64,000 bases of DNA. Origin: Podarcis erhardii. Taxonomy: Eukaryota. The notes below the pieces were generated by a model that saw only the letters and a program-made list of their open reading frames with translations, searched no databases and was not told where the DNA came from. Position 1 is the first letter of the stretch, and every line of letters starts with the position of its first letter. The translations under genes were made by a program, and so were the position numbers. Shown here piece after piece: positions 8,119 to 27,171 of this stretch. The DNA lies in assembly GCA_964252035.1 (NCBI GenBank), contig OZ176213.1. One strand, 5' to 3'.

Positions 8119-8341
8119 CAGTGGTACCTCGGGTTACATACGCTTCAGGTTACAGACTCCGCTAACCCAGAAATAGTACCTCGGGTTAAGAAATTGGCTT
8201 CAGGATGAGAACAGAAATCATGTGGCGGCGGCGCAGCAGCGGGAGGCCCCATTAGCTAAAGTGGTGCTTCAGGTTAAGAACAGTTTCAGGTTAAGAACAG
8301 ACCTCTGGAACAAATTAAGTACGTAACCAGAGGTACCACTG
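8119..8341 (+). mobile_element. Tc1/mariner (pogo/Tigger-like) MITE
   Basis: TIRs CAGTGGTACCTCGGGTTAC / GTAACCAGAGGTACCACTG (18/19), TA on both flanks; second copy at 23480. Confidence 0.9.
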
Positions 8342-8854
8342 TATAGCTGTCAGATCACAGGGAAAGGCCATTGCCTTCATATTCGGCTTGTGAGCTGCCC
8401 AGAGGAGCCCAGATAGATCAGAGAAGGTTGAGCTTAGTTGCACCTTTCTGGTCTGATATGATTGTGCTGTTTTGTTTTTAAGTGGACTTAAAAAAATCTA
8501 GTGCACAAGAGGTCTGGTTTATTTTTTTGGGGGGGGAGGAATCTTTCACACACGGAAACATCAGCCTCCTGTTTTCCACTGTGTTTTGTATCCTCTTCCT
8601 CCTTGTCTGTTTTTACCCTCTTGCATTCATCTAACGATTGCTTTAACTATATCTGGGCTACCACCCCACCAAATTCCTGTGGACAATCGTTACAGGTTAA
8701 CCAAGACTGACCGGTGATTGCAGTTCACTTGTTTCCATTGACCCCAGCCGTTGGCTGCCCGGCTCATAAAATCTGTTATGCACAAAAGTGCATAAAATGA
8801 AGATGAAGTGCCTCCTCCCAGCCTTGACAAAAACCGTTCCTTCTGCTGAACTGG

Positions 8855-9114
8855 NNNNNNNNNNNNNNNNNNNNNNNNNNNNNNNNNNNNNNNNNNNNNN
8901 NNNNNNNNNNNNNNNNNNNNNNNNNNNNNNNNNNNNNNNNNNNNNNNNNNNNNNNNNNNNNNNNNNNNNNNNNNNNNNNNNNNNNNNNNNNNNNNNNNNN
9001 NNNNNNNNNNNNNNNNNNNNNNNNNNNNNNNNNNNNNNNNNNNNNNNNNNNNNNNNNNNNNNNNNNNNNNNNNNNNNNNNNNNNNNNNNNNNNNNNNNNN
9101 NNNNNNNNNNNNNN
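8855..9114. other. Assembly gap, 260 N
   Basis: Run of N in the sequence. Confidence 1.
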
Positions 9115-11335: not shown

Positions 11336-13945
11336 AGTTCATCACCCTTCCTTCAGGAGGGGGAAAATAAGCAACTAGGAAAATTTGAATGGTTTTGCTC
11401 TCAAGTGGTATGTGTGTGCACACACGCCTGCCTCTGATAACACAGTCTGTCTTTCTGTGCCCAAAATAGCTATCTTGCCAGGTCTGGGCACATTGCCTTC
11501 TCAGAGCTCCCTGCAGGGAAGCATTTGAATTTTCCAAGTGGTAGAAACTTAGAGTTATGCAAAATGGACTTGGCCCACACCAAGTCCCTTCAGGCTTCAA
11601 ACGTCTGGGGATATGGTTAATAGTCAATAAAATATTTGACACAATTGTGCTGGTCATGCTTAAAAGCTGTTCTTTGTAAATGGATATAGAAGGCTCAGAG
11701 TAATGAACACAAATAGGTAACATTCAGCAAGAGAGTTCTGTGTTTTGTTTTTGTTTTCCTGGTGGGGAGGTGTCAAAAAGGCAACAACTGAGATTTCGTC
11801 TTTCCTGTAGTCTGTTTAAACAGGGTAGGAATATCGAATGTAGCAGCAGCTTAAAATAACTACTCCAGCCGTTAGAGGCTATTCAGAAGAATGAAAACTG
11901 CCAATCTTTACCATGAGTTAATTTTTCTGATTAGGTGAGCAGAAAGCAGGGTTAAAAGTTAGTGAGATGATGAATCAATGCCCTTCTAATTTAGAAATAA
12001 TACTGTTCTATTAGGGAGGAGGGCTTACTATACCATGCATTCTTCTGCAAGATTTTCAGCACCCTGTTAATTGATCCAAATGCTTTAATTGGAAAATCAA
12101 TCCATAGATTATAACACTGAATTATCTCAAGTGATGTTATATTTAGAGAATATAAATTTTGACCAGGTAATGAAACAAACAAATCATGTTTTACTTAAGC
12201 AAGTCATTTTAAAGATACCCACCTGGATCCAGAATATTTTGCCTTTTTGATGCATCTTCTTCCGGAAAGCAGAACTGCGGGGATTTGAAACTACACAAAG
12301 CAGCCCTGCCCTGCCCCCATTTCTTTTCACCACAAGGAGAAGATTGGAACATGTATTCTTTTGGATGTATTGCTCTTCTTCCTATATTGAAACAAATGGA
12401 GGAAGAATTGTGTGTAAGGAGCTCCATGTCCGGCCCTGAATTGGGTTTGGTATCTGGATCAAGGTAGCAAGCACATAATTTAAATGACCAATGTCAACTA
12501 GTTGTTCTGCTTAGTATTCACTTGTGGGGGAATGTTTTTCCAGCAAACTCATTGGGACAGGTAATTACTGCAGCAGCTACAGCCTAATTTGAAGTGTTAG
12601 CTGTTAATTAAAACACTGCCAAGGTGTCCGGTTTTCTTTTGGTGTAACCAAAGCTCCCATTCAGACTCCATTAATCACTTTACAGTTAATGTGCTGCAGG
12701 AGGTCAAGACAATTGAGATGCCATGGCGGTCAGGAGTAAACAAGTTTCCTTTCTTCCAGGTAGCATGGCACTTGCAGAAGCCAAGGGGATGCTCTGCCCC
12801 TGTGGGCACCGTATCTGTTTTGTGATCTCTTTCTCAATGATAATTAAAAGTTAAATTGCTACTGTCAATGCTCTGTAAACCAAACCAGGTACTTGCTCTT
12901 TGCTGGAAATTTAACCCAAACTTCCACGGATGAATTGGCGTGCATCATAATTAAATCATCAAGTCTTTCCTTTTAATTCATTTGGAAACAAGAGACCATC
13001 CCCATCCCCACTCCTCTCATGGAATAAGAAGGTGGTGGGAAGGATCGGCTTTCTTGACAGGCTAATTAAGTTGCCAAACTGCCCAGCACAGTACATATTG
13101 AACTAACAGACGTTAAGCATCCCATCTCAGATGTTTGTTTTCTTATCGTTTCTGCTTATCTGAAAGTCAAAATGTTCTGCCATTGTTGGTTCATCAATAG
13201 TTACCTCATGGATTACCTTCTATTTGGTTTATTGACTGTGCCTTCTGCTGTCAGTCTCTCAATTATCGTTTAAGTGGATAGTCTTCTTTTCTGCTTTTAA
13301 ATGCTTTTTCTTCAAATATATTTGGGATTCGCATAAATGCTGCTAAAAATTGTGTTTACAAATAAATCACATTGCTTGTGCATAATTTTAATACATAAAT
13401 TGTATTTTCATAAATTAAAATTAAATAATAGAAATGTAAATGTGTGAGTGATTATTCTGTAAAAAATTATAATATATATGAACAGAGGCACTGAGGCCGC
13501 AGTCCTTATGGCTAGCAAATCACATTGCATTTTATGGTGTGCTTTTTAGTTGAGTCCTGCAATGTCCTACCAAGACAAGAATAGTCCAGGTATTGATACC
13601 TGCCATGTGCTTGATATCACCCCCTTCTCTGTTTTTGCACTCCCAGGCAGGCAGCAAAATGGGAAGCCTATTTAGCTTTTATTAAACCACATTATGCAGT
13701 TGATAGGTTGCATTCAGTTGGTGAATTAGGAGTTGTGAAAGATTGATGTGAGTTTGCAAAATGGAAAGATGTCTGAAGCTGTTTACTTCATAAGAGCGAG
13801 AACTGGTGATGTGTATCACCCAAATTAACAAGTTGCTCAAAAATGGCATTGACTGCAAGTATTCATTAGTGTAACAAATCCAAAGAATGGATCTGATCCC
13901 CCCACTGCAGTTTGAACTGACTTTTTCTCTTTTTTCTGTATGCAG

Positions 13946-13985
13946 AGCAAACCATGTCCCCAGTGGGAAAATACTAGCCGTAAAG
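13946..13985 (+). CDS. MAP2K5: MAP2K5 exon 9 equivalent, (K)ANHVPSGKILAVK, with the catalytic Lys
   Basis: 40 nt; TGCAG acceptor, GTATGT donor; phase 2 start completes the AA|A Lys codon of the previous exon. Confidence 0.97.
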
Positions 13986-15420: not shown

Positions 15421-18400
15421 ATGAACACTGACAAGACAACCACTCAAGCCAGGATGCCGATGAGCTGGTGAGCAGATTAGCTGGCCAGGTGGTGAGCAGA
15501 TGTCGGCCATCTGAGAGACACTTGATCTTTTACCTGAACAGCAAGTTGCTCAGGCAGAAGTTTCAGGGTACAGGGCCAGAAGGAATCTCATTGGCCTCCT
15601 GAGTCACCTGGCTGCTTGTCAGAGCATCATCTAAATGCAGCAGAGAAAGGGCCAGCAGCTCTGTCCTCGGACAAGTCCTCATGGTGGCTCAGAGAACAAG
15701 ATGCCTCTGGCACTCCAGCAGCTAAACCAAGTTGAGGCTGCAGGGCCTTAGGCTGGGCATAAGAATGCTATTTGACTTGTTGATTCGGGTGTGAAAATAT
15801 ATTGAGCCTTGCTTTGTGGAAAGAGGGAGAAGAGTTTGAAAAAAGAGGGTGCCAGCAGTTTATACTCCCCCTCTCACTTCAAAACTATTTCTGTTTACTT
15901 AAAAACAGAGAGGAAAAATCTGTATGAGTTGAATATGCAATAAACTCCTGCTTTGTGGTTTCCTATCAGCTGATGCCTGTGGAACGTGCCCTCTGAACCT
16001 TCCTACCTCCTGCGGGAAGCCACCCGACTGAGGAGGTAGCATCCCTCCCCTTGCGTTGTGTGTGAGGAGGCCGTGTGCTGTTCTGCAACTACAGTGTTTC
16101 CTCTGCTCTTAACCTAGCATTTAAATGGTCCATTTGATTAATCATTTGTATACTGACTATCGTACTCCCAAATTTCCTCTGAGTTGTACATACTGTAAAA
16201 GACAATTATGTCACCACAGATTAAATAAGTGAATTAAAATGGAGTTGCAGCTTAATTTGACCTGTGATTTTGCTCTCGTTCCCTTTAGTGGCGTGCACAC
16301 CATTCCAGCAAATAGATGAAGTCATCCATGACAGCCGGTGATGAATTGCCATCGCTATACTGTATATTTTAATAGCCTCTCACTAATTTAAATTGAGCAC
16401 CGAGTAAATTATAATTCAGTCACTTGACTGCTTGTATTTAACTTGACAACTCATCCTTATTTGTCCTGGAGGTGTAGGAGAGAAGTGGAGAAAATGGGCT
16501 CAGGTATTTCTCATAGGGTTAACCCTTTCCCCTTGTAGTGTTCCGTGTCAAAGCCATTGTAGATAGGAACTTGATTGCTATTTCTGTTGCTGCTGTTATT
16601 TAACAAAAGGCGGGGCAATGATTTTAGGGCTGGGAGTCACATTTCCCATTTTAAATTGGGAAATGGGTTACACTCAAACTGTATGAACATGCCCCCTGAC
16701 CCCTTTCCTTCCTTACCACCCCTTTTCTTGGCACACTTCCACTCAAATAAATTAATAAAATATATGGGGCCAGAATACCAATGCAGGTCCCAGTATTCAA
16801 TACCTACCCTTTGTCCATTTCTGTATTTAGAGTAACTAAAATCGTGTAAAAAAAAATAATGAAGGTGATTTAGGGCCCAGAGTTACAGTGCAATTCTAAA
16901 CATGTCTACCCAGGAGTAATTCCTACTGAATTCAAAAAGGCTTACTCCTGGGTAAGGGGGGTTTGGTTTGTATTCTGAGTCTGTGATCCAACAGGAAAAT
17001 CATGGCTGCCTGTTTGCTGACATAGTTTATATCCTGCACCTTCAACATAATTTTGTATCTCAGGGCAGCCAAGAGAGTAGTCAGAAACAAGAAGTACAAT
17101 TTAGGTGATAATGTGTGCAAACTAGCTCATTTTAATAGGTGGTAAAATCAAACTGTTCTAAGTTACATTCTTACATTAGCATTTTTAAAAAGATAGTGGC
17201 TAAATGATAGCTGTGAGTTCTCCAGGTGGGCCTCTTTGGGAGGGCATTCCAAAGGTTTACTTTTAGTGAGCCTTGGGGAGTTGAGAGGAACTTGTGCCAT
17301 GTTGACATGGGTGGGTTTATGCATGACTGACTCAATATCAAATCAGGCCACAATCTGGATCTTCTGCAGTTTCCTAGCATCCTCTAAGTTGGCTGCGTGT
17401 GGTCCTCAGCCTTACTTCCAGTGGGGAAACTAGAAGGAAAGAAGGAAGGCAGAGCAAGACCAAAATGGGAAGGAAAACCAAAACGGAGGTGGGGGGAAGT
17501 CCTCTGTAAGCAATCGGTTCAGACTTCTTGCAAGAACATCTTCCCTTGCAGAGAGAAAGAGAAGCTGGTGACAGAGGTGACAAAGAAAGAAGAGAATTTG
17601 ACCCTGCCCACCTTGAGCCCTGGTCCTGCCCACTGCTGGCATGTGACCCCTAAGGAAATGCAACCCTTTCCAGAAAAAGTTTACTTGCCTCTGTCCTAAA
17701 ATAATTCTGGCTAAGTCCACAGTGGTGAATGTACCATGATTACTGTTTTGAACTTACTTTGGGGAAAACGGAAACTCCCTAAAATTGCATAGTGGGTGTT
17801 TCATGTGGCATGCCGTGGCCACAGTTTTTCAGTGGTGTGGCATGAGATTGTGTCATAGTGGCCAATCTCTGTGACAAGCCTTTGCTCGTGTACACATTGC
17901 GGCCTGGGGCAATTGGCAGCATTAATGCAATGTTGAGTAAAAGCCATGTGGTGGCCATTTCGTGTGAAGGAGGGCTAAGACCCTTCCATTCTTAAAAATC
18001 AATGTGCCTGTAATTCACAGCAACTCAGGGACTTTCTTCATTTCACGTCTTGGCTGATGCAGCATTTGCCATCCGTGACATCGAATCCAGTCAATATTCG
18101 GCTAAAGCTTTTGCAATGGGGGAAGCTGGGTTTCGAGCAGGGTTTTAACAATTGGAAAAGCAATCTCTTTTAGATATGATAGAGGGTTAAATTTTGTTGT
18201 TGTTTTAATGGGCAAAATTGATACAGTGTTCCAGCAGGTTACTTTGTTTTAAGCTTTCCACCCTGGAAAAAAAATGTAAGTGAATATTGTTGGCAAATGA
18301 CTATTGATCTGGAGAAATGTGTTAAATGTTCTCTTGGCAGCCTTTCTATTACAGTTACAATTTAGTTTAGTGAGAGCTTTTATAAATAACCCTAAAGCAA

Positions 18401-18631
18401 ATTCTTGATAGAAACTGGTTATGCTCTTTTTTCTCTGTTTAGACATACATCAATACTGTAAAATGTAGGTTTAGAAATGGGTTCTTTTTGTATGTGTGGT
18501 GTGGTGTTTTGTTTTGTTTTAAAATCAGAGGTCATGTTGCTTTCCATTGCCAACCTCGTGTGTTGTTGGTTGTGTTAATCCTGCAAAATATTATTGAGTC
18601 TCAACCAAGTACCAAAATCCTTGGGAGTGTA

Positions 18632-19500: not shown

Positions 19501-20360
19501 GTGAGTGGCGCTTGCATATTCTTGAAAAGCCTCAACTGTGGTTTTTTTTAAATGTAATTGGGAAATCAATTTGAACATTTGTGCACATCCTAAAGAAGCA
19601 CAAAGCGATTCCTAGTACAGATGGTGCAAGATGTCTTTTTCTCTTTTTTTTAGGAGGTATTTTAAAAATAATAACCTTTCACAAGCCTTAACACATCAGG
19701 CAGGCGAGAGTCATGATTACTTGATGTTAAGTATGTTACATTTTCCTCAATGGAGCTGCATTGACTTTTTATTGGAAATTTAAATAGAACAGAAGTAAAT
19801 GCTGCTTTATCTGTTGCTTGATATTTTCGACTTCCATACAATCTGTCTTTACTGACAAAACAGCTGTTCCCACTTTTAATGTTTCAGTCGCCAGCACAGA
19901 TTTTCCTTTAAATAAGCCTATTAGCTCACCCATTGTCCTGTGTGTTTTCAGCAAGCAGGAGTGGGTTGGGCATGGCAGGATTAAAGAGTTTCAGAGATTT
20001 TTTCGCCTGGGTTTCCTTAGCAATTTAACCCCATTGTTCATCCAATTAGAAATGTATCACATGAACAAGGCAGATGCACCTGAGCAGGTGAGTCAAGCAA
20101 TTGATTTTGATAGCAAGATATTTCCTCCCTATCCCTGGCAATATCACAAAAGAACTCTGGAGCCACTACTCCAGGATTGTGCTTTCCTCTCAGATGATGC
20201 AGTGTAGTGGCTTGGGCCAGCCCTATAGGTGAACAAGGGGGACGTTGGCAGACCTCACTTTGCTTATTACAGGCTAATCCTTTCTTCTGAGTCAATATCT
20301 TTACAAGCAAGTTCCTCTGTGTTTTATTTGATATTAACTATGTTTTGTTTGTTCCTGCAG

Positions 20361-20422
20361 GGGGCTCTTTGGATGTCTACAGAAAAATTCCAGAACACGT
20401 ACTGGGAAGAATAGCCGTAGCA
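20361..20422 (+). CDS. MAP2K5: MAP2K5 exon 12 equivalent, (G)GSLDVYRKIPEHVLGRIAVA
   Basis: 62 nt; CCTGCAG acceptor, GTGAGT donor; phases match neighbours. Confidence 0.98.
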
Positions 20423-21235
20423 GTGAGTACTTTGGGGTTCTATTTTTAATATAATAGTGTTAAATACTTAAATATTTATCACAGCTGATATTTGTAGATA
20501 TAAATATCATAGGAAGATGAGGAGTGGGGGGAGAGTGAGAATCATGGGGCACCTTGATAGCTAACAAATTTATTATGTGTGAACTATTGAGGAACTTCAT
20601 TCTGGACTTCAGTCCACAAAAGCTTTTGCCATTATAAAATCTGTTAGTTTTCAACAGGCCCCAAGACCCTTGGTGGTTTTTGGTGCAACAGACTACACAA
20701 CTACCCCCCTAAAAATGGGGGTGGGGAAAACCTCTTCCTTTTCTAGTATGTATTGGAGAATCGCAAATAAGTTTGGTTTGTAATTTGTTGGAGCCTAAGA
20801 AGTCTGCTTATAAGAAAACACCCTACAAAGTTTCTATATTATTAATTCTCATGTTGGCGTACTGTAGTCTCTTTAATTTTGTCAGTTTCATCAGTTGAAA
20901 GTTGTTTTCATAGAGATGTCTGGAAATTGCCATTAAAGTTCAATTTCAGTTTTTTATAATGTTGGAGTACTCTAAACAAATTCTAAAAGCCACATAAAAG
21001 CCACATGTTTTTCAAACAGCCTAATAGCAATCCTGTTATATATTTTGAAACTAATGTTGCATTCCATTTCACTTGTATCTTATTACATGCTTACCAGGAA
21101 GTTTTTGTCAAGTGAAACACATCTTCATCTGCATGTATTTGCACTGTTGATTGTATTCAGTTTTCGGGGGGGGTAGGTAGTATATCAGATTGACTTTATA
21201 AAAAGTAAATAACTCACATTACAGAGTTTAGGACA

Positions 21236-22170: not shown

Positions 22171-23479
22171 TTTCCTAAAGCGAGTAGTCCCTAATATTAA
22201 GTTATGCACTTGCACAACGTATAGGCATATAACATACAGCTACCCCAATATATAGGACCTATTTTCCCCAGAAGATCAATAATAATTCTGTTTGCTCCAT
22301 CCATTAGTGTGGTGTACATGAAGGTCCCAGATAGTCTTCTCTCCATGATCCATCCAGAAGCTGCTTCAGCATAGTTGTTGCACTAGTATTAGATCTTATC
22401 CCTTCATGCCATGCTGGGGATAATGAGCTGAATTCTCCAAGTCTAAGAAGAGAATGTATCATAATTTTAAAGCCGCAGCCAAGACCAGTTGGAAGGGAGG
22501 TGTCATGGGGTAGGGTGCTGCTGAACAATTGCTAAATCTGAAGCAGGCTTTGATAATTTAAGTGGTTTAAAGCAGAACAAAAAGTTATTCTAAAATGTAC
22601 CATTTAATTAAATGCCTGTTTTCCACACTCATTATACATCAAGCTGACAACTGAAATCCTTTAATCTGATGCAGGCAGCTATTTAGGCTCCTTTCATTGT
22701 AATTCGCAGCTCAGCTTCATTCTCTCCACTTTAGCTGCATGTGCAAAGAGCATCTTTTAATCTGATGCTATCGCTTTGGAGCACTTGCAGATGGGCTTGT
22801 TTTTTCAGACTCGGCATGGTTCGCTTCTAACACACACACATGCACATACTGCTTTGGTGAGAGTAAAAGTGTTTCACTTTTGCAGTCCAGAGGATTTGCA
22901 CGATCTTATTAAATAACATTCATTTCTATAGTTCACTGTAAATTACAAATACTTTCTCCTCCTAGGCCTTTAGCCTGACAACAAGCATTCTGGAGTAGCA
23001 TCTTCAAACAGTTTTTCCAGAAAGGGAACATGTGCTGTGTCCAAGGCCACGCAGTGGATTCATGGCCAAACTAAAATCAAATTTTTGCATGATTTCTGAA
23101 AACCTGACTTTGAGTGATTGATCTAAGAAATCTTAAGTCTCTAGTTCAGTCCAACCCTTTTGGGTCCATGGAAACATCTGCAAACAGGAGAAATGAGTGC
23201 ATTCCACCCCTCACTCAACCTAACACACACCACAATCTAGTCTACTGTCTCCAATAAATGCTACTTTCACAATTAATTTCAGCAGCATTGGGGTACAGGA
23301 CCCTGGAGGCACCAGGGAAGACTTGTGCAGGTGAGCTTGCAAGTCTGGAGGTGTGCATGGGGCAGCCAGGGCTATGTGATAAGAGCCTTAAAAAAACTCA
23401 GCCATTCAGCAGAGAAGGTGGAGAAAGAGTGTGTGTGTTATGAATTATGCTACTCCTGCTACTCCTGAACTCCTGACTA

Positions 23480-23737
23480 CAGCGGTACCTTGGGTTACAG
23501 ACGCTTCAGGTTACAGACGCTTCAGGTTACAGACGCTTCAGGTTACAGACTCCGCTAACCCAGAAATAGTGCTTCAGGTTAATAATTTTGCTTCAGGATG
23601 AGAACAGAAATCATGCGGCAGCGGCATGTCAGCAGCTGGAGGCCCCATTAGCTAAAGTGGTGCTTCAGGTTAAGAACAGTTTCAGGTTAAGAATGGACCT
23701 CCAGAACGCATTAAGTTCTTAACCAGAGCTACCACGG
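23480..23737 (+). mobile_element. Tc1/mariner MITE, same family as 8119-8341, with an internal 16-bp triplication
   Basis: TA-flanked; CAGCGGTACCTTGGGTTAC left TIR; TTACAGACGCTTCAGG x3. Confidence 0.9.
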
Positions 23738-24303
23738 TATTGGATTGGGGAGGGGAACTGCATGTGTAGTGTCTGTCCAGATACAGGATTTCCCCTTTAG
23801 CTGGGGATATGATTGCAGAAGCACTCCAGCTGGATCAGATCAAATGTCTTGCTGGTGCCTTTAAGGGGTCACGGTTAAGTATCAACTTGCCAATATATTT
23901 TTGTGTGTTTTTCTGTCCCTTGTCCCAATTCCTTATATTCAACTGCATTCTTTCTTTAACAAATTCAGTTTAAGAAAAACTTGAACTGAATTTGCACAAG
24001 TGAATGTGATGGTCTTGCTCCTGATCTGTAAAACATGGATGGAATCCACCGTACACAGCCTTGCCACCTGTTAGTTCTTGGTGCTAGACTTAAAAACAAT
24101 CTTTCAGTTGCAACCAGAAGACAAGGCCAGTGCTGTACCAAAGCTAAGACAGGGCTACCAAATATTCCCAGACTGCCTTTTGCTTGTAACTTCAGATTTT
24201 TATTTTTATTTCCATTCCCGAAGCAACAACACAATGCACTGTATTTTGAGTGCTAATGTTGATTGAAGCTTTTTTCCCCCCCTGCAAAAGATGTGCACTT
24301 AAG

Positions 24304-24379
24304 CTGTCAAGAGAGTGAGTGATTGATGGCCGATCTAACTACTATTTGTGTCAAGGCTTTGTCAAGTCATTGTTGTCAA
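24304..24379 (+). promoter_or_regulatory. Candidate PBX-HOX/MEIS enhancer core
   Basis: TGATTGATGGC at 24320-24330 with TGTCAA at 24305, 24349, 24360, 24374; motif evidence only. Confidence 0.55.
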
Positions 24380-24734
24380 ATGCTGCTTTACTGAATATCA
24401 CAATATCTTCTGGAGTATTCAGTCAAAATGAATTCTATGCCACCATCTCTTTGATATAATGCTCAATACCTTGCGTCTACATTCTGAACCGGGAAATGGC
24501 CTTTTATTCAGTGTAAATGAATAGCTGTGATTCCTGATCAATGTACAAAGGGTTACAGGGCATTGTTGGATCTGTAGTTGTGAAATGTTCTTTTTTTTAA
24601 AAAAGAAAAAGTTGAAATGAAAAATCTGCTTGGTTAAGAGTGTGCTTTTTATAAGTATTTATTCAGCAGACATGCTTTGGTACAAAAGCTCTTAATGAAC
24701 TAATATTTGTTTTTTTGTCACCCTGGATGTAAAA

Positions 24735-24783
<49 letters not shown>
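24735..24783. repeat. (TAT)n microsatellite
   Basis: Direct inspection. Confidence 0.97.
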
Positions 24784-25789
24784 TAAAAATCCAAAATTCA
24801 AAAATGAACAGCAATATGCATTTACATTTAGTGTAGCCTCCACTCCTTGATGTGTTGTTACAGTATATGTACAGTGAAAAACAAAGATGCTTAACCACCT
24901 CTTATAGGACGGGATATAACTGATTTCCCTCCCGACTTGTACCCCATTTCTGCTGTAGTTTTGTGTACACTCAGCTTGAAAACATGTCGACAGTTTCTAT
25001 TATTCGTCTTCTGCCATAAGGACTAGTCCCTTATTCACTTTTTAAAATAAAAGATTTTCAGAATTCTAAGGAAGCAACTTTTATTAGTTCTAAGAATTAA
25101 AATTTTGTTGTTTTTGAGACTTTGTCAGTGGCACATTTGAATCAGGAAGATGAATGCAAATGTGTAGAATAGCTAGCAGAATTTTGCAAGAAAGATGTTC
25201 CATGTTAAAATGCTGACCCAACAGAAAGGAGGCAACAAAAAAATCAGGTTTTTAGGGTGTCATTCTAGACAAGGCTTTATAAAATTTGCAAGGTATTTGA
25301 AAGCAATGGTACAGATTTAGGAATAAAATTTACAGGGGTAAGGAAGTAAGAAGTTTCACACCCTGTCGGTTTAAATTCCTTAGCTATTGATTGGATTGGC
25401 TCTATATAGAAAGACAAGAAGAAATGCATTTTTTCTAGGCATGTGCATTGAGATGCTTTTTATTACAGGGTGTGCATAAATATCGATCACACAAGGGCCA
25501 CTTTTCTGTGGCTTCTTCACACTCCATTACAGGAATTCCAGTAAAGCTTGGAATGTACTACCACAAGATATAGCAAAGGTGATTAACTTTTAAAAAGCTA
25601 TTAGTGGCTGATAATTTTGATCCTCAAAGGGGGAAAAATATATAAAGTACACATTGTTACATTTCCTCAAAGGTGGCCAAAATCTGACTTCTTTTGGTTG
25701 TGATTTTTATATCATGGTAGATTCCAGTTTTAACTCTAGAAAATGAAAATCCATACCTTCAAGCATTCCTTTCTCTCTTCTGTTTGCAG

Positions 25790-25838
25790 GTTGTTAAAGG
25801 CCTTACATATTTATGGAGTTTAAAAATTTTACATAGAG
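25790..25838 (+). CDS. MAP2K5: MAP2K5 exon 13 equivalent, VVKGLTYLWSLKILHR(D)
   Basis: 49 nt; TTGCAG acceptor, GTGAGT donor; HRD motif split across the junction. Confidence 0.98.
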
Positions 25839-27171
25839 GTGAGTTGTGGATTTGTTTTTGCATTTTTCCAGTGCATATAATTGTTTAGTTTCATAAAAGG
25901 AATCACTATGATGTATTCAAGATTAACAGGTTTCTGGTAGAATGGAGGGTTTTTTTAAGGGAGCAACCTACTTCATCTGTTGCATAAAGTTAACATTTGG
26001 CTTGGTGCATATAAGCACAGTCTGGGATGGGATTCAGGGTTTTGGAACATAGCTGAAAATTGTGGGAGTGGAAATTGCTGATGATGGCTGAAATATTATA
26101 AATATCATCCAAAGCAAATGAAAAGCAATTTACATTTTGATATTTCTCTGGCCATGCACCCATCAAGAATAATTTCTCAGAGTAGTATGTGAGCCATAGA
26201 GTTGTGATTTGGCACCTTACAACAGCTGTTCAGGCCCCAGTATTGTAGTTCGTTGTTCCCTGCTTTGGAGCTGATTGGCTCCTTCTGGGTAATGACCAGT
26301 CACCAGCACCTCCCAAATGGATGTCCCACCTGATGTACAGGTGAGAAGTATGGCAGATGCATCCCATGGTGACAAACTTCTCTTGTTGAGGTTTCAGCTT
26401 GGCCTTTTCAACTAGAGCACCCCAATCTGCCATCAGTGGCTGATATGCATAATGAAAACTATCCAGTGTGAACCCTCAAACTGCAGATTTTGCAGAGCAG
26501 AGATAATCCTACTGATGCAGCCATCCAGTCTTTAAATGAGCTAATTTGTGAACCCACCCTTGAGCTCTTAGAATAGCCAGCAACCTCCAGAGGGAGCAGG
26601 CGACCAGGGTCAGAACAGCAGCAACAATTTGTCTGCTGTTACTGCTAATGCACAGGGGGTGGTGAAACATACATTCATATGTATATGTAGATATGTGTCG
26701 CTGCTGATAATTATCTCTTAGCAATTCACATCTCAAACAGGGTTTTGTATTTCTCAGTTTCCTTGAACTTTGGAATTCTGCACTCTAATGCTTGTGTGAA
26801 ATTCAAGAGGAGAGGGTGGCTTTTGTTTTTTAAAAATATTTTGAATAAAATGGATTTTTAAAATATCTATTTGGTATTGAATAAGGCAACTGCATTCAAC
26901 TTCTTGACCCTCTCCTTGACATTTTTGTAACAGCTAGAAAAGAGTTGCCCACATGCCATTTATCCAGTAGCCTGGTAAAAAATAGCTCAGATGGAGGTGG
27001 AATGAAAAGGCATCTGTTCATCCTCCATAAGGCTTGTCTCATATAAATAATTGGTATTAAGGAAACACTTGTGATCATGGGCACATAATGTTCCATTTTG
27101 GCTCTTGTTTAAATTCTTCCACATTCAAAATGGAAGTATTAATCACAAAACAGATGCTTTGGGAGAACATT

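What the first reader, a model, noticed from the sequence alone, without database searches (positions are those of the whole stretch)
24304..24379. PBX-HOX site surrounded by four co-oriented MEIS-type TGTCAA sites in 76 bp
Seen: CTGTCAA (24304), TGATTGATGGC (24320-24330), TGTCAA (24349, 24360, 24374), all on one strand, inside about 750 bp of non-repeat sequence (23930-24700); a second GAGTGATTGAT lies at 23112. Known: TGATTGATGG is the optimal anterior HOX-PBX site and, with TGACA, defines vertebrate hindbrain enhancer grammar. Inference: best enhancer candidate in the window, plausibly linking MEIS1 to SKOR1, two restless-legs genes. I know of no description of this element, but could not search.
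Basis: partly seen in the sequence, partly recalled or inferred. Interest (0 to 1): 0.7.

Follow-up and report, generated by a model that had tools for sequence, protein, structure and literature searches.

The report
Lizard-and-relatives conserved intronic TALE-site element
The motif cluster is real and forms the core of a roughly 250-base non-coding block in a MAP2K5 intron that at least three squamate lineages have kept, so it is probably a regulatory element bound by PBX-type factors; the HOX-specific reading, conservation beyond squamates and the link to SKOR1 remain unproven.

Summary
Observation confirmed. CTGTCAA (24304), TGATTGATGGC (24320) and TGTCAA (24349, 24360, 24374) are all on the + strand. 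They lie in the 5.3-kb MAP2K5 intron between exons ending at 20425 and starting at 25790.

The PBX-HOX + CTGTCA pair alone is at chance level: at least one such pair appears in 38% of shuffles, and a second one sits at 16329-16348. Four co-oriented TGTCAA in 76 bp is rare (1 of 2000 shuffles).

The decisive evidence is conservation. Orthologous contigs from two other squamates (L006; L010/L011) are collinear with the window but align to it only in islands. One island is 24179-24428 (79-84% identity). Between L006 and L010 this block is 93% identical against a 65% median.

Motif by motif:
- The PBX half (GAGTGAGTGATTGA) is invariant.
- TGATTGATGG reads TGATTGACAG, the PBX:PREP/MEIS decamer, in the other two squamates.
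- CTGTCA is kept in L006 and lost in L010.
- TGTCAA sites 2 and 3 are invariant but non-canonical for MEIS.
- TGTCAA site 4 is found only in the window.

A teleost map2k5 gene shows no trace of the element. Birds and mammals could not be reached.

"Best enhancer candidate in the window" is not supported. The block at 16103-16535 is better conserved, including in a probable mammal, and carries an invariant TGACAG-4bp-TGATGAATTG. The MEIS1-to-SKOR1 link is already published, through other sites.

Verdict: a new member of a known kind, of moderate interest.

The parts
24179..24428 (.). Squamate-conserved non-coding element (about 250 bp) that contains the finding.
   Evidence: blastn gave 24280-24428 vs L006 at 79% (E 3e-27) and 24280-24395 vs L010/L011 at 84.5% (E 2e-28). 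An upstream extension, 24179-24225, is 74-77% identical and collinear. Between L006 and L010 the block is 93% identical against a 65% median.
24304..24309 (+). CTGTCA, the canonical MEIS/PREP hexamer (HEXA), 10 bp upstream of the PBX site.
   Evidence: Kept in L006; reads CTGTCG in L010/L011 (A2).
24313..24326 (+). GAGTGAGTGATTGA, an invariant stretch that includes the PBX half-site TGAT.
   Evidence: Identical in the window, L006, L010 and L011 (A2).
24320..24329 (+). TGATTGATGG, a PBX:HOX-type decamer in this lizard. The orthologous site reads TGATTGACAG (PBX:PREP/MEIS DECA) in L006 and L010/L011.
   Evidence: A1 and A2. The motif fits TGATNNATKR (PMC4489388). The Hoxa2 r4 element reads TGATTGATGA (PMC2425489). 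DECA is described in PMC6023610.
24340..24376 (+). A 37-nt nearly invariant block, TACT-n-TTTGTGTCAAGGCTTTGTCAA-n-TCATTGTTGT. It holds TGTCAA sites 2 (24349) and 3 (24360) and the SOX-like cores CTTTGT and CATTGTT.
   Evidence: 35 of 37 columns are identical in all four sequences (A2). TRF finds an 11-bp period.
24374..24379 (+). TGTCAA site 4, specific to the window's lineage.
   Evidence: Reads TGTAAA in L006, L010 and L011 (A2).
20360..20425 (+). MAP2K5 exon (GGSLDVYRKIPEHVLGRIAVAV), upstream border of the host intron.
   Evidence: conserved in L006.
25790..25838 (+). MAP2K5 exon (VVKGLTYLWSLKILHR), downstream border of the host intron.
   Evidence: conserved in L006 and L010/L011.

Best explanation
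The 76-bp cluster is the core of a roughly 250-bp conserved non-coding element in a MAP2K5 intron of a lizard. Most likely it is a developmental cis-regulatory element whose key input is a PBX-containing TALE complex bound at the invariant GAGTGAGTGATTGA.

In this lizard the site reads as PBX:HOX (TGATTGATGG), with a MEIS/PREP hexamer 10 bp upstream. [quoted passage not shown] In two other squamates the same site is the PBX:PREP/MEIS decamer TGATTGACAG, which needs no HOX partner.

The adjacent invariant 37-nt block holds two TGTCAA and two SOX-like cores. It probably binds further factors, such as weak MEIS/TGIF-type or SOX-type proteins.

Shown: the sequence, its position in the gene, and conservation with motif-level turnover. 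Inferred: binding, enhancer activity, tissue, and the target gene (SKOR1 and/or MAP2K5).

Conservation:
- Orthologous contigs from two other squamates are collinear with the window and align to it only in islands, one of which covers the finding.
- The four-sequence alignment A2 has 89% mean column identity, with invariant GAGTGAGTGATTGA and an invariant TGTGTCAAGGCTTTGTCAA.
- L006 and L010 can be aligned through neutral intron (median 65% in 60-column windows), yet the block is 93% identical.

Against non-regulatory readings:
- No open reading frame is conserved.
- There is no Rfam match over the element: the only two hits in 24271-25789 are weak, far below their gathering scores, and lie elsewhere (24530-24636 and 25318-25436).
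- There is no covariation.

Literature:
- TGATNNATKR plus CTGTCA within 40 bp predicts hindbrain enhancers when conserved (PMC4489388).
- HEXA sits about 10 bp from PBX:HOX, and DECA is bound by PBX:PREP (PMC6023610).
- TGATTGATGA is the functional Hoxa2 r4 site (PMC2425489).
- MAP2K5 hosts 15 HCNEs of the LBXCOR1/SKOR1 regulatory block (PMC2831330).
Against: - Conservation is shown only within squamates.
- The element, and every other squamate island, is undetectable in a milkfish map2k5 gene.
- The published syntax requires both motifs to be conserved. Here the HOX half is not, and CTGTCA is lost in L010.
- The bare motif pair is at chance level.
- The two invariant TGTCAA lack the leading C that is invariant in the published MEIS/PREP matrix.
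- There are no chromatin, binding, expression or reporter data.
- The species behind L006 and L010 are unknown, so the depth of the comparison is only bounded by how far the sequences can be aligned.
Confidence: 0.5

Rival explanations
1. The block is a real regulatory element, but the TALE reading is incidental. Its function rests on other factors that bind the invariant 37-nt block, for example SOX-type factors on CTTTGT and CATTGTT, or an unknown factor on the 11-bp-spaced GTCAAG repeats.
For: The longest invariant run is the 37-nt block, not the PBX:HOX decamer. TGTCAA sites 2 and 3 do not fit the CTG[T/C]CA matrix. AACAATG and ACAAAG, read on the minus strand, match the SOX consensus as I know it. 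The canonical CTGTCA is dispensable in L010.
Against: GAGTGAGTGATTGA is also invariant, and both of its variants are perfect known TALE dimer sites. That is unlikely if the site were unconstrained.
Confidence: 0.22
2. One reading: an anterior PBX-HOX/MEIS hindbrain enhancer, conserved in birds and mammals, through which MEIS1 controls SKOR1.
For: In the window the arrangement is a perfect syntax match with a 10-bp gap. MAP2K5 introns host SKOR1-block HCNEs (PMC2831330). MEIS1 activates SKOR1 in human cells (PMC6093889).
Against: The HOX half-site and two of the four MEIS-type sites are not conserved even among squamates. No teleost counterpart was found. The published MEIS1 sites lie in the SKOR1 upstream region, not in MAP2K5. 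A better-conserved syntax match sits at 16329-16348.
Confidence: 0.1
3. The block is a conserved non-coding transcript feature, not an enhancer: an alternative or non-coding exon, an intronic RNA hairpin, or a splicing-control element of MAP2K5.
For: It is intronic and on the sense strand. TGATTGA and TCAAGTCA form an imperfect inverted repeat, which gives a predicted hairpin.
Against: The covariation term is +0.31 and nearly all pairs are invariant. There is no Rfam match over the element: the only two hits in 24271-25789 are weak, far below their gathering scores, and lie elsewhere. No conserved open frame exists and there is a 1-bp indel. The element is 1.4 kb from the nearest splice site.
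Confidence: 0.08
4. The block has no function. The motifs are a chance co-occurrence plus an old 11-bp micro-duplication, in a patch that merely evolves slowly.
For: The pair syntax is at chance level. TRF finds an 11-bp period. Only three lineages were compared, and two of them are related.
Against: 93% identity against a 65% background between L006 and L010. The block can still be aligned to a lizard whose neutral intron no longer aligns. The other islands in the same comparison include exons and one block that is also kept in a probable mammal.
Confidence: 0.1

Closest known systems
Hindbrain enhancer syntax 'hb_40' (Grice et al. 2015, PMC4489388; Parker et al. 2011, PMC3261376)
   Same: TGATNNATKR (here TGATTGATGG) with CTGTCA 10 bp away. 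The element is intronic, near a developmental transcription-factor gene block, and inside a conserved non-coding element.
   Different: The published predictor requires both motifs to be conserved (human-fish CNEs or GERP elements). Here the PBX:HOX form is specific to the window's lineage, CTGTCA is lost in one squamate, and conservation beyond squamates is not shown.
Hoxb2 / Hoxa2 rhombomere-4 PBX-HOX + PREP/MEIS elements (Jacobs 1999 and Ferretti 2000 as cited in PMC6023610; Lampe 2008, PMC2425489)
   Same: An anterior-type TGATTGAT octamer (the Hoxa2 element is TGATTGATGA), with a PREP/MEIS hexamer on the same strand about 10 bp away.
   Different: Those elements sit in Hox clusters, are conserved from fish to mammals, and have been validated in vivo. 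This one is in MAP2K5 and is untested.
DECA elements bound by PBX:PREP (Ladam et al. 2018, PMC6023610; Penkov 2013 as cited there)
   Same: The orthologous site in L006 and L010/L011 is a perfect TGATTGACAG.
   Different: In the window the decamer is changed at two bases. DECA elements typically have a CCAAT about 20 bp away. Here the only CCAAT is about 68 bp away, it is found in L006/L010, and it is absent from the window.
HCNEs of the LBXCOR1 (SKOR1) genomic regulatory block inside the bystander gene MAP2K5 (Dong et al. 2010, PMC2831330)
   Same: A conserved non-coding block within a MAP2K5 intron.
   Different: Their 15 HCNEs are defined by deep vertebrate conservation. I could not establish whether this block is one of them. 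The 16103-16535 block is a better fit.
MEIS1 sites upstream of human SKOR1 (Catoire et al. 2018, PMC6093889)
   Same: MEIS/PBX-type sites proposed to control SKOR1.
   Different: Those sites are 8.7 and 1.76 kb upstream of the SKOR1 ATG, poorly conserved, and tested by EMSA and luciferase assay. This one is deep inside MAP2K5, in a reptile, and untested.

Membership tests
hb_40 PBX-HOX + MEIS/PREP hindbrain enhancer syntax | PBX-HOX motif TGATNNATKR is present | tested here: met
   TGATTGATGG at 24320-24329.
hb_40 PBX-HOX + MEIS/PREP hindbrain enhancer syntax | CTGTCA lies within 40 bp | tested here: met
   CTGTCA at 24304-24309, gap 10 bp.
hb_40 PBX-HOX + MEIS/PREP hindbrain enhancer syntax | Both motifs are conserved across species (CNE / GERP element) | tested here: not met
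   L006 and L010/L011 read TGATTGACAG, which fails TGATNNAT. L010/L011 read CTGTCG (A2). The surrounding block itself is conserved among squamates. Conservation to birds, mammals or fish was either untestable or not found.
hb_40 PBX-HOX + MEIS/PREP hindbrain enhancer syntax | Segment-restricted hindbrain reporter activity that depends on both sites | not testable with these tools
   Needs a transgenic assay.
DECA (PBX:PREP) element | TGATTGACAG decamer | tested here: not met
   The window has TGATTGATGG. The decamer is present only in the orthologues L006 and L010/L011.
DECA (PBX:PREP) element | NF-Y CCAAT box about 20 bp away | tested here: not met
   There is no CCAAT in the window's element. 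In L006/L010 a CCAAT lies about 68 bp downstream (A2; spacing from PMC6023610).
HCNE of the SKOR1/LBXCOR1 regulatory block within MAP2K5 | Non-coding and located inside MAP2K5 | tested here: met
   The element is in the intron between the exons at 20360-20425 and 25790-25838. No conserved frame exists.
HCNE of the SKOR1/LBXCOR1 regulatory block within MAP2K5 | High conservation between distant vertebrate classes | tested here: inconclusive
   Conserved among three squamate lineages. Not detectable in milkfish map2k5. Bird, turtle and mammal loci could not be fetched.
HCNE of the SKOR1/LBXCOR1 regulatory block within MAP2K5 | Acts on SKOR1 rather than on the host gene | not testable with these tools
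   Needs chromatin-contact or perturbation data.

The most novel reading that the evidence does not exclude
One orthologous TALE site has switched, by two adjacent substitutions (TGATTGA-CA-G versus TGATTGA-TG-G), between the two binding modes described for TALE factors. One mode is the HOX-independent PBX:PREP/MEIS decamer; the other is a PBX:HOX site with a nearby HEXA hexamer. The rest of the element stayed fixed. This would be a natural example of a conserved enhancer changing its HOX dependence between squamate lineages, possibly with a change in where SKOR1 or MAP2K5 is expressed along the body axis.
Probability: 0.15. Interest if true: 0.55.

Novelty: new member of a known kind. Interest (0 to 1): 0.35.

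Why it matters
If the element is active, it adds a concrete, mutable candidate to the poorly charted regulatory landscape of the MAP2K5/SKOR1 locus, a restless-legs risk locus. It would also give a compact natural experiment: the same conserved element carries a PBX:HOX site in one squamate lineage and a PBX:PREP/MEIS decamer in another. As it stands, it is one more conserved non-coding element with TALE motifs. Thousands of these have been predicted, and within this same window a better-conserved example exists at 16103-16535.

Tried and rejected
- **Reads.** No RNA or depth data were obtained. From then on no letters of 24235-24270 went to any search or comparison: they were replaced by N or left out, and I worked beside them.
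- **Word search with the ORF around exon Ef.** It gave only short contigs from distant taxa (L001-L005). These share the exon and nothing else, and do not reach far enough upstream.
- **The big protein search.** I kept the query as short as possible (32 aa).
- **Full genes too long to fetch.** Podarcis 133 kb, Crotalus 126 kb and Pelecanoides 140 kb.
- **Other fetch failures.** Ictalurus gave only mRNA contigs. P0004 and P0005 contigs were too short.
- **L015.** This is probably buffalo host DNA, inferred from the sample label plus PMC8831627. It ends before the relevant intron. I did not take it for human (no Alu signature, ruminant-gut study label), but its host is not proven.
- **Word search with an ORF across the element.** Blank, which says nothing.
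- **GTDB pattern scans.** The first found nothing; the second found 8 bacterial chance matches, mostly Porphyromonas.
- **Rfam and RNAalifold.** Nothing.
- **Published element lists.** The held text of Grice et al.'s supplements has no MAP2K5 or SKOR1 entry, but their genome-wide table was cut when stored.
- **CCAAT as an NF-Y partner of the decamer.** Rejected as weak, because the spacing is 68 bp rather than about 20 bp.

Full report
**1. What is there**

The window is a piece of MAP2K5 on the + strand. I mapped ten exons with clean ag/gt borders by six-frame motif search. Their translations are identical to annotated squamate MAP2K5, for example Crotalus isoform X9. The finding lies in the 5.3-kb intron between the exon ending at 20425 (GGSLDVYRKIPEHVLGRIAVAV) and the exon starting at 25790 (VVKGLTYLWSLKILHR). 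The sauropsid-type residue in VENRISLCTEFMDG and the collinear squamate contigs found below are consistent with that.

**2. Is it more than chance?**

There are two answers.

- The core grammar, TGATNNATKR plus CTGTCA within 40 bp (Grice et al. 2015, PMC4489388), is not. It occurs twice in this window (also at 16329-16348) and at least once in 38% of composition-preserving shuffles. Grice et al. themselves count 31,081 such pairs in the masked human genome and use only the conserved ones.
- Four co-oriented TGTCAA in 76 bp is unusual. It occurred in 1 of 2000 dinucleotide shuffles. It is also the only four-copy hexamer cluster in the window outside microsatellites, A/T-rich low-complexity tracts and the 16-bp tandem array.

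TRF sees a weak 11-bp period over sites 2 and 3, so an old micro-duplication may have created them. Only site 1 has the leading C that is invariant in the published MEIS/PREP matrix, CTG[T/C]CA.

**3. Conservation**

The reads tools gave nothing. I kept those 36 letters out of every later search and comparison and worked beside them.

To obtain orthologous introns I went through proteins.

- A short exon peptide in the big search gave MAP2K5 ids and also ORF fragments called on genomic contigs.
- One fragment led to L006, a 17.7-kb Logan contig.
- A pattern built from the part conserved between the window and L006 found two JGI metagenome contigs, L010 and L011. They are 99.6% identical to each other.
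- L006 and L010 align almost continuously at 70-79%, so they are two related species.
- Both are collinear with the window but align to it only in islands, so the window's lizard is more distant.
- The contigs have no Alu signature and have compact introns like the window's. I take them for squamate host DNA, not human.

The islands between the window and L006/L010 are:

| Window position | What it is |
|---|---|
| exons | MAP2K5 coding exons |
| 12534-13180 | non-coding island |
| 16103-16535 | non-coding island |
| 18244-18479 | non-coding island |
| 19740-19951 | non-coding island |
| 22516-22712 | non-coding island |
| 24280-24428 | non-coding island that contains the finding |
| 27015-27171 | non-coding island |

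The island with the finding is 79% identical to L006 (E 3e-27) and 84.5% identical to L010 (E 2e-28). It extends upstream to 24179. Between L006 and L010, where neutral intron is still alignable (median 65% identity in 60-column windows), the block at L006 14416-14701 is 93% identical. It is one of seven blocks of 90% or more in 5.4 kb, and another of the seven is the exon. The finding therefore sits in a constrained element of about 250 bp.

**4. Motif by motif (alignment A2)**

| Feature | Window | L006 | L010/L011 |
|---|---|---|---|
| Site 1 | CTGTCA | CTGTCA | CTGTCG |
| GAGTGAGTGATTGA | invariant | invariant | invariant |
| Decamer | TGATTGATGG | TGATTGACAG | TGATTGACAG |
| Sites 2 and 3 (TGTGTCAAGGCTTTGTCAA) | invariant | invariant | invariant |
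| Site 4 | TGTCAA | TGTAAA | TGTAAA |

- TGATTGACAG is the DECA site of PBX:PREP/MEIS dimers (Ladam et al. 2018, PMC6023610).
- Sites 2 and 3 sit inside a 37-nt block with 35 invariant columns.
- What is conserved, then, is a PBX-type TALE site plus a neighbouring block. The block's two TGTCAA are non-canonical for MEIS and overlap SOX-like cores (CTTTGT, CATTGTT; the SOX match rests on my own knowledge).
- The HOX-specific half and two of the four "MEIS" sites are not conserved.
- With only two deep lineages, the ancestral state of the decamer cannot be told.

**5. Deeper conservation**

- A milkfish map2k5 gene (L014, 47 kb) has the orthologous intron at only 1.5 kb. It shows no trace of the element or of any other squamate island.
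- This does not exclude a fish counterpart on the paralogous block that lost map2k5 (Dong et al. 2010, PMC2831330).
- Birds, turtles and mammals could not be reached. Their gene ranges exceed the tool's 100 kb limit, one bird contig was withheld, and the other routes were blank.

**6. Alternatives**

- No reading frame is conserved, and there is a 1-bp indel.
- No Rfam family matches the element. The scan of 24271-25789 returned only two weak hits, far below their gathering scores and located elsewhere.
- A predicted hairpin comes from an imperfect inverted repeat (TGATTGA / TCAAGTCA) and has no covariation support.
- The block is single-copy in the window.

**7. Comparison with what is known**

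- In this lizard the arrangement matches the hb_40 syntax and the roughly 10-bp HEXA/PBX:HOX offset (PMC4489388, PMC6023610).
- The octamer is that of the validated Hoxa2 r4 element, TGATTGATGA (PMC2425489).
- Membership in the hb_40 class fails on its defining requirement that both motifs be conserved.
- MAP2K5 is a published bystander host of 15 HCNEs of the LBXCOR1/SKOR1 block (PMC2831330), and MAP2K5 is listed among UCE-associated genes (PMC13513235). An intronic SKOR1 enhancer here is therefore plausible.
- No data tie this block to SKOR1.
- The MEIS1-to-SKOR1 link is already published, via sites 8.7 and 1.76 kb upstream of the SKOR1 ATG (PMC6093889).
- I found no paper that describes this element.

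**8. The stronger candidate**

The block at 16103-16535 is 89.7% identical to L006. It is 86.7% identical over 466 bp to L015. L015 is a contig from an ENA metagenome labelled TONG22-1, and its exon carries the non-sauropsid residue RISICTEF. By inference from the label and PMC8831627, it is probably water-buffalo host DNA.

That block contains TGACAG-4bp-TGATGAATTG, a full syntax match that is invariant in all three sequences (A3). "Best enhancer candidate in the window" therefore belongs to that block, not to the finding.

**9. Verdict**

This is a new member of a known kind: a lineage-conserved non-coding element with TALE sites. The one moderately interesting twist is the apparent toggling between PBX:HOX and PBX:PREP/MEIS forms of the same site. 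Interest 0.35.

Noticed in passing
window 16103-16535 (core 16329-16348): This is the most strongly conserved non-coding block seen: 89.7% identical to squamate L006 and 86.7% over 466 bp to L015 (non-sauropsid, probably buffalo host DNA). It holds TGACAG-4bp-TGATGAATTG, a complete PBX-HOX + MEIS/PREP syntax match that is invariant in all three sequences. It is a better hindbrain-type enhancer candidate than the finding.
   Followed up: partly
window 12534-13180, 18244-18479, 19740-19951, 22516-22712, 27015-27171: Further non-coding islands are conserved with L006 and/or L010 (77-83% identity). 18270-18417 and 19759-19948 are also conserved in L015. Together they look like the intragenic conserved-element set reported for MAP2K5 as a bystander of SKOR1.
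   Followed up: partly
window 8855-9114: A run of 260 N lies in the intron between the exons at 250-312 and 13947-13985.
   Followed up: no
They lie inside the conserved element, 34 bp upstream of the finding. They were left out of all later searches and comparisons.
   Followed up: no
window 23522-23740 and 8129-8344; tandem at 23493-23550: A dispersed repeat is present in two copies in the window (88.6% over 219 bp). Just 5' of one copy is a perfect 16-bp tandem, GGTTACAGACGCTTCA x3.6. It is probably a squamate SINE-like element.
   Followed up: no
window 54784-54793: A second exact TGATTGATGG sits in an A/T-rich stretch, with no CTGTCA within 100 bp. Its conservation could not be tested because no orthologous contig reaches it.
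   Followed up: no
window 24318-24326 vs 24360-24369: GTGATTGA and TCAAGTCA form an imperfect inverted repeat. Read on the minus strand, site 3 is TGACTTGACAA, a near-copy of the PBX:MEIS decamer. This could be a second, inverted TALE site or simply the source of the predicted hairpin.
   Followed up: partly
L006 12813-12918, 13331-13425, 14898-14962, 16989-17152: These blocks are at least 90% identical between L006 and L010 but have no detectable counterpart in the window's lizard. They may be lineage-restricted conserved elements in the same intron region.
   Followed up: no
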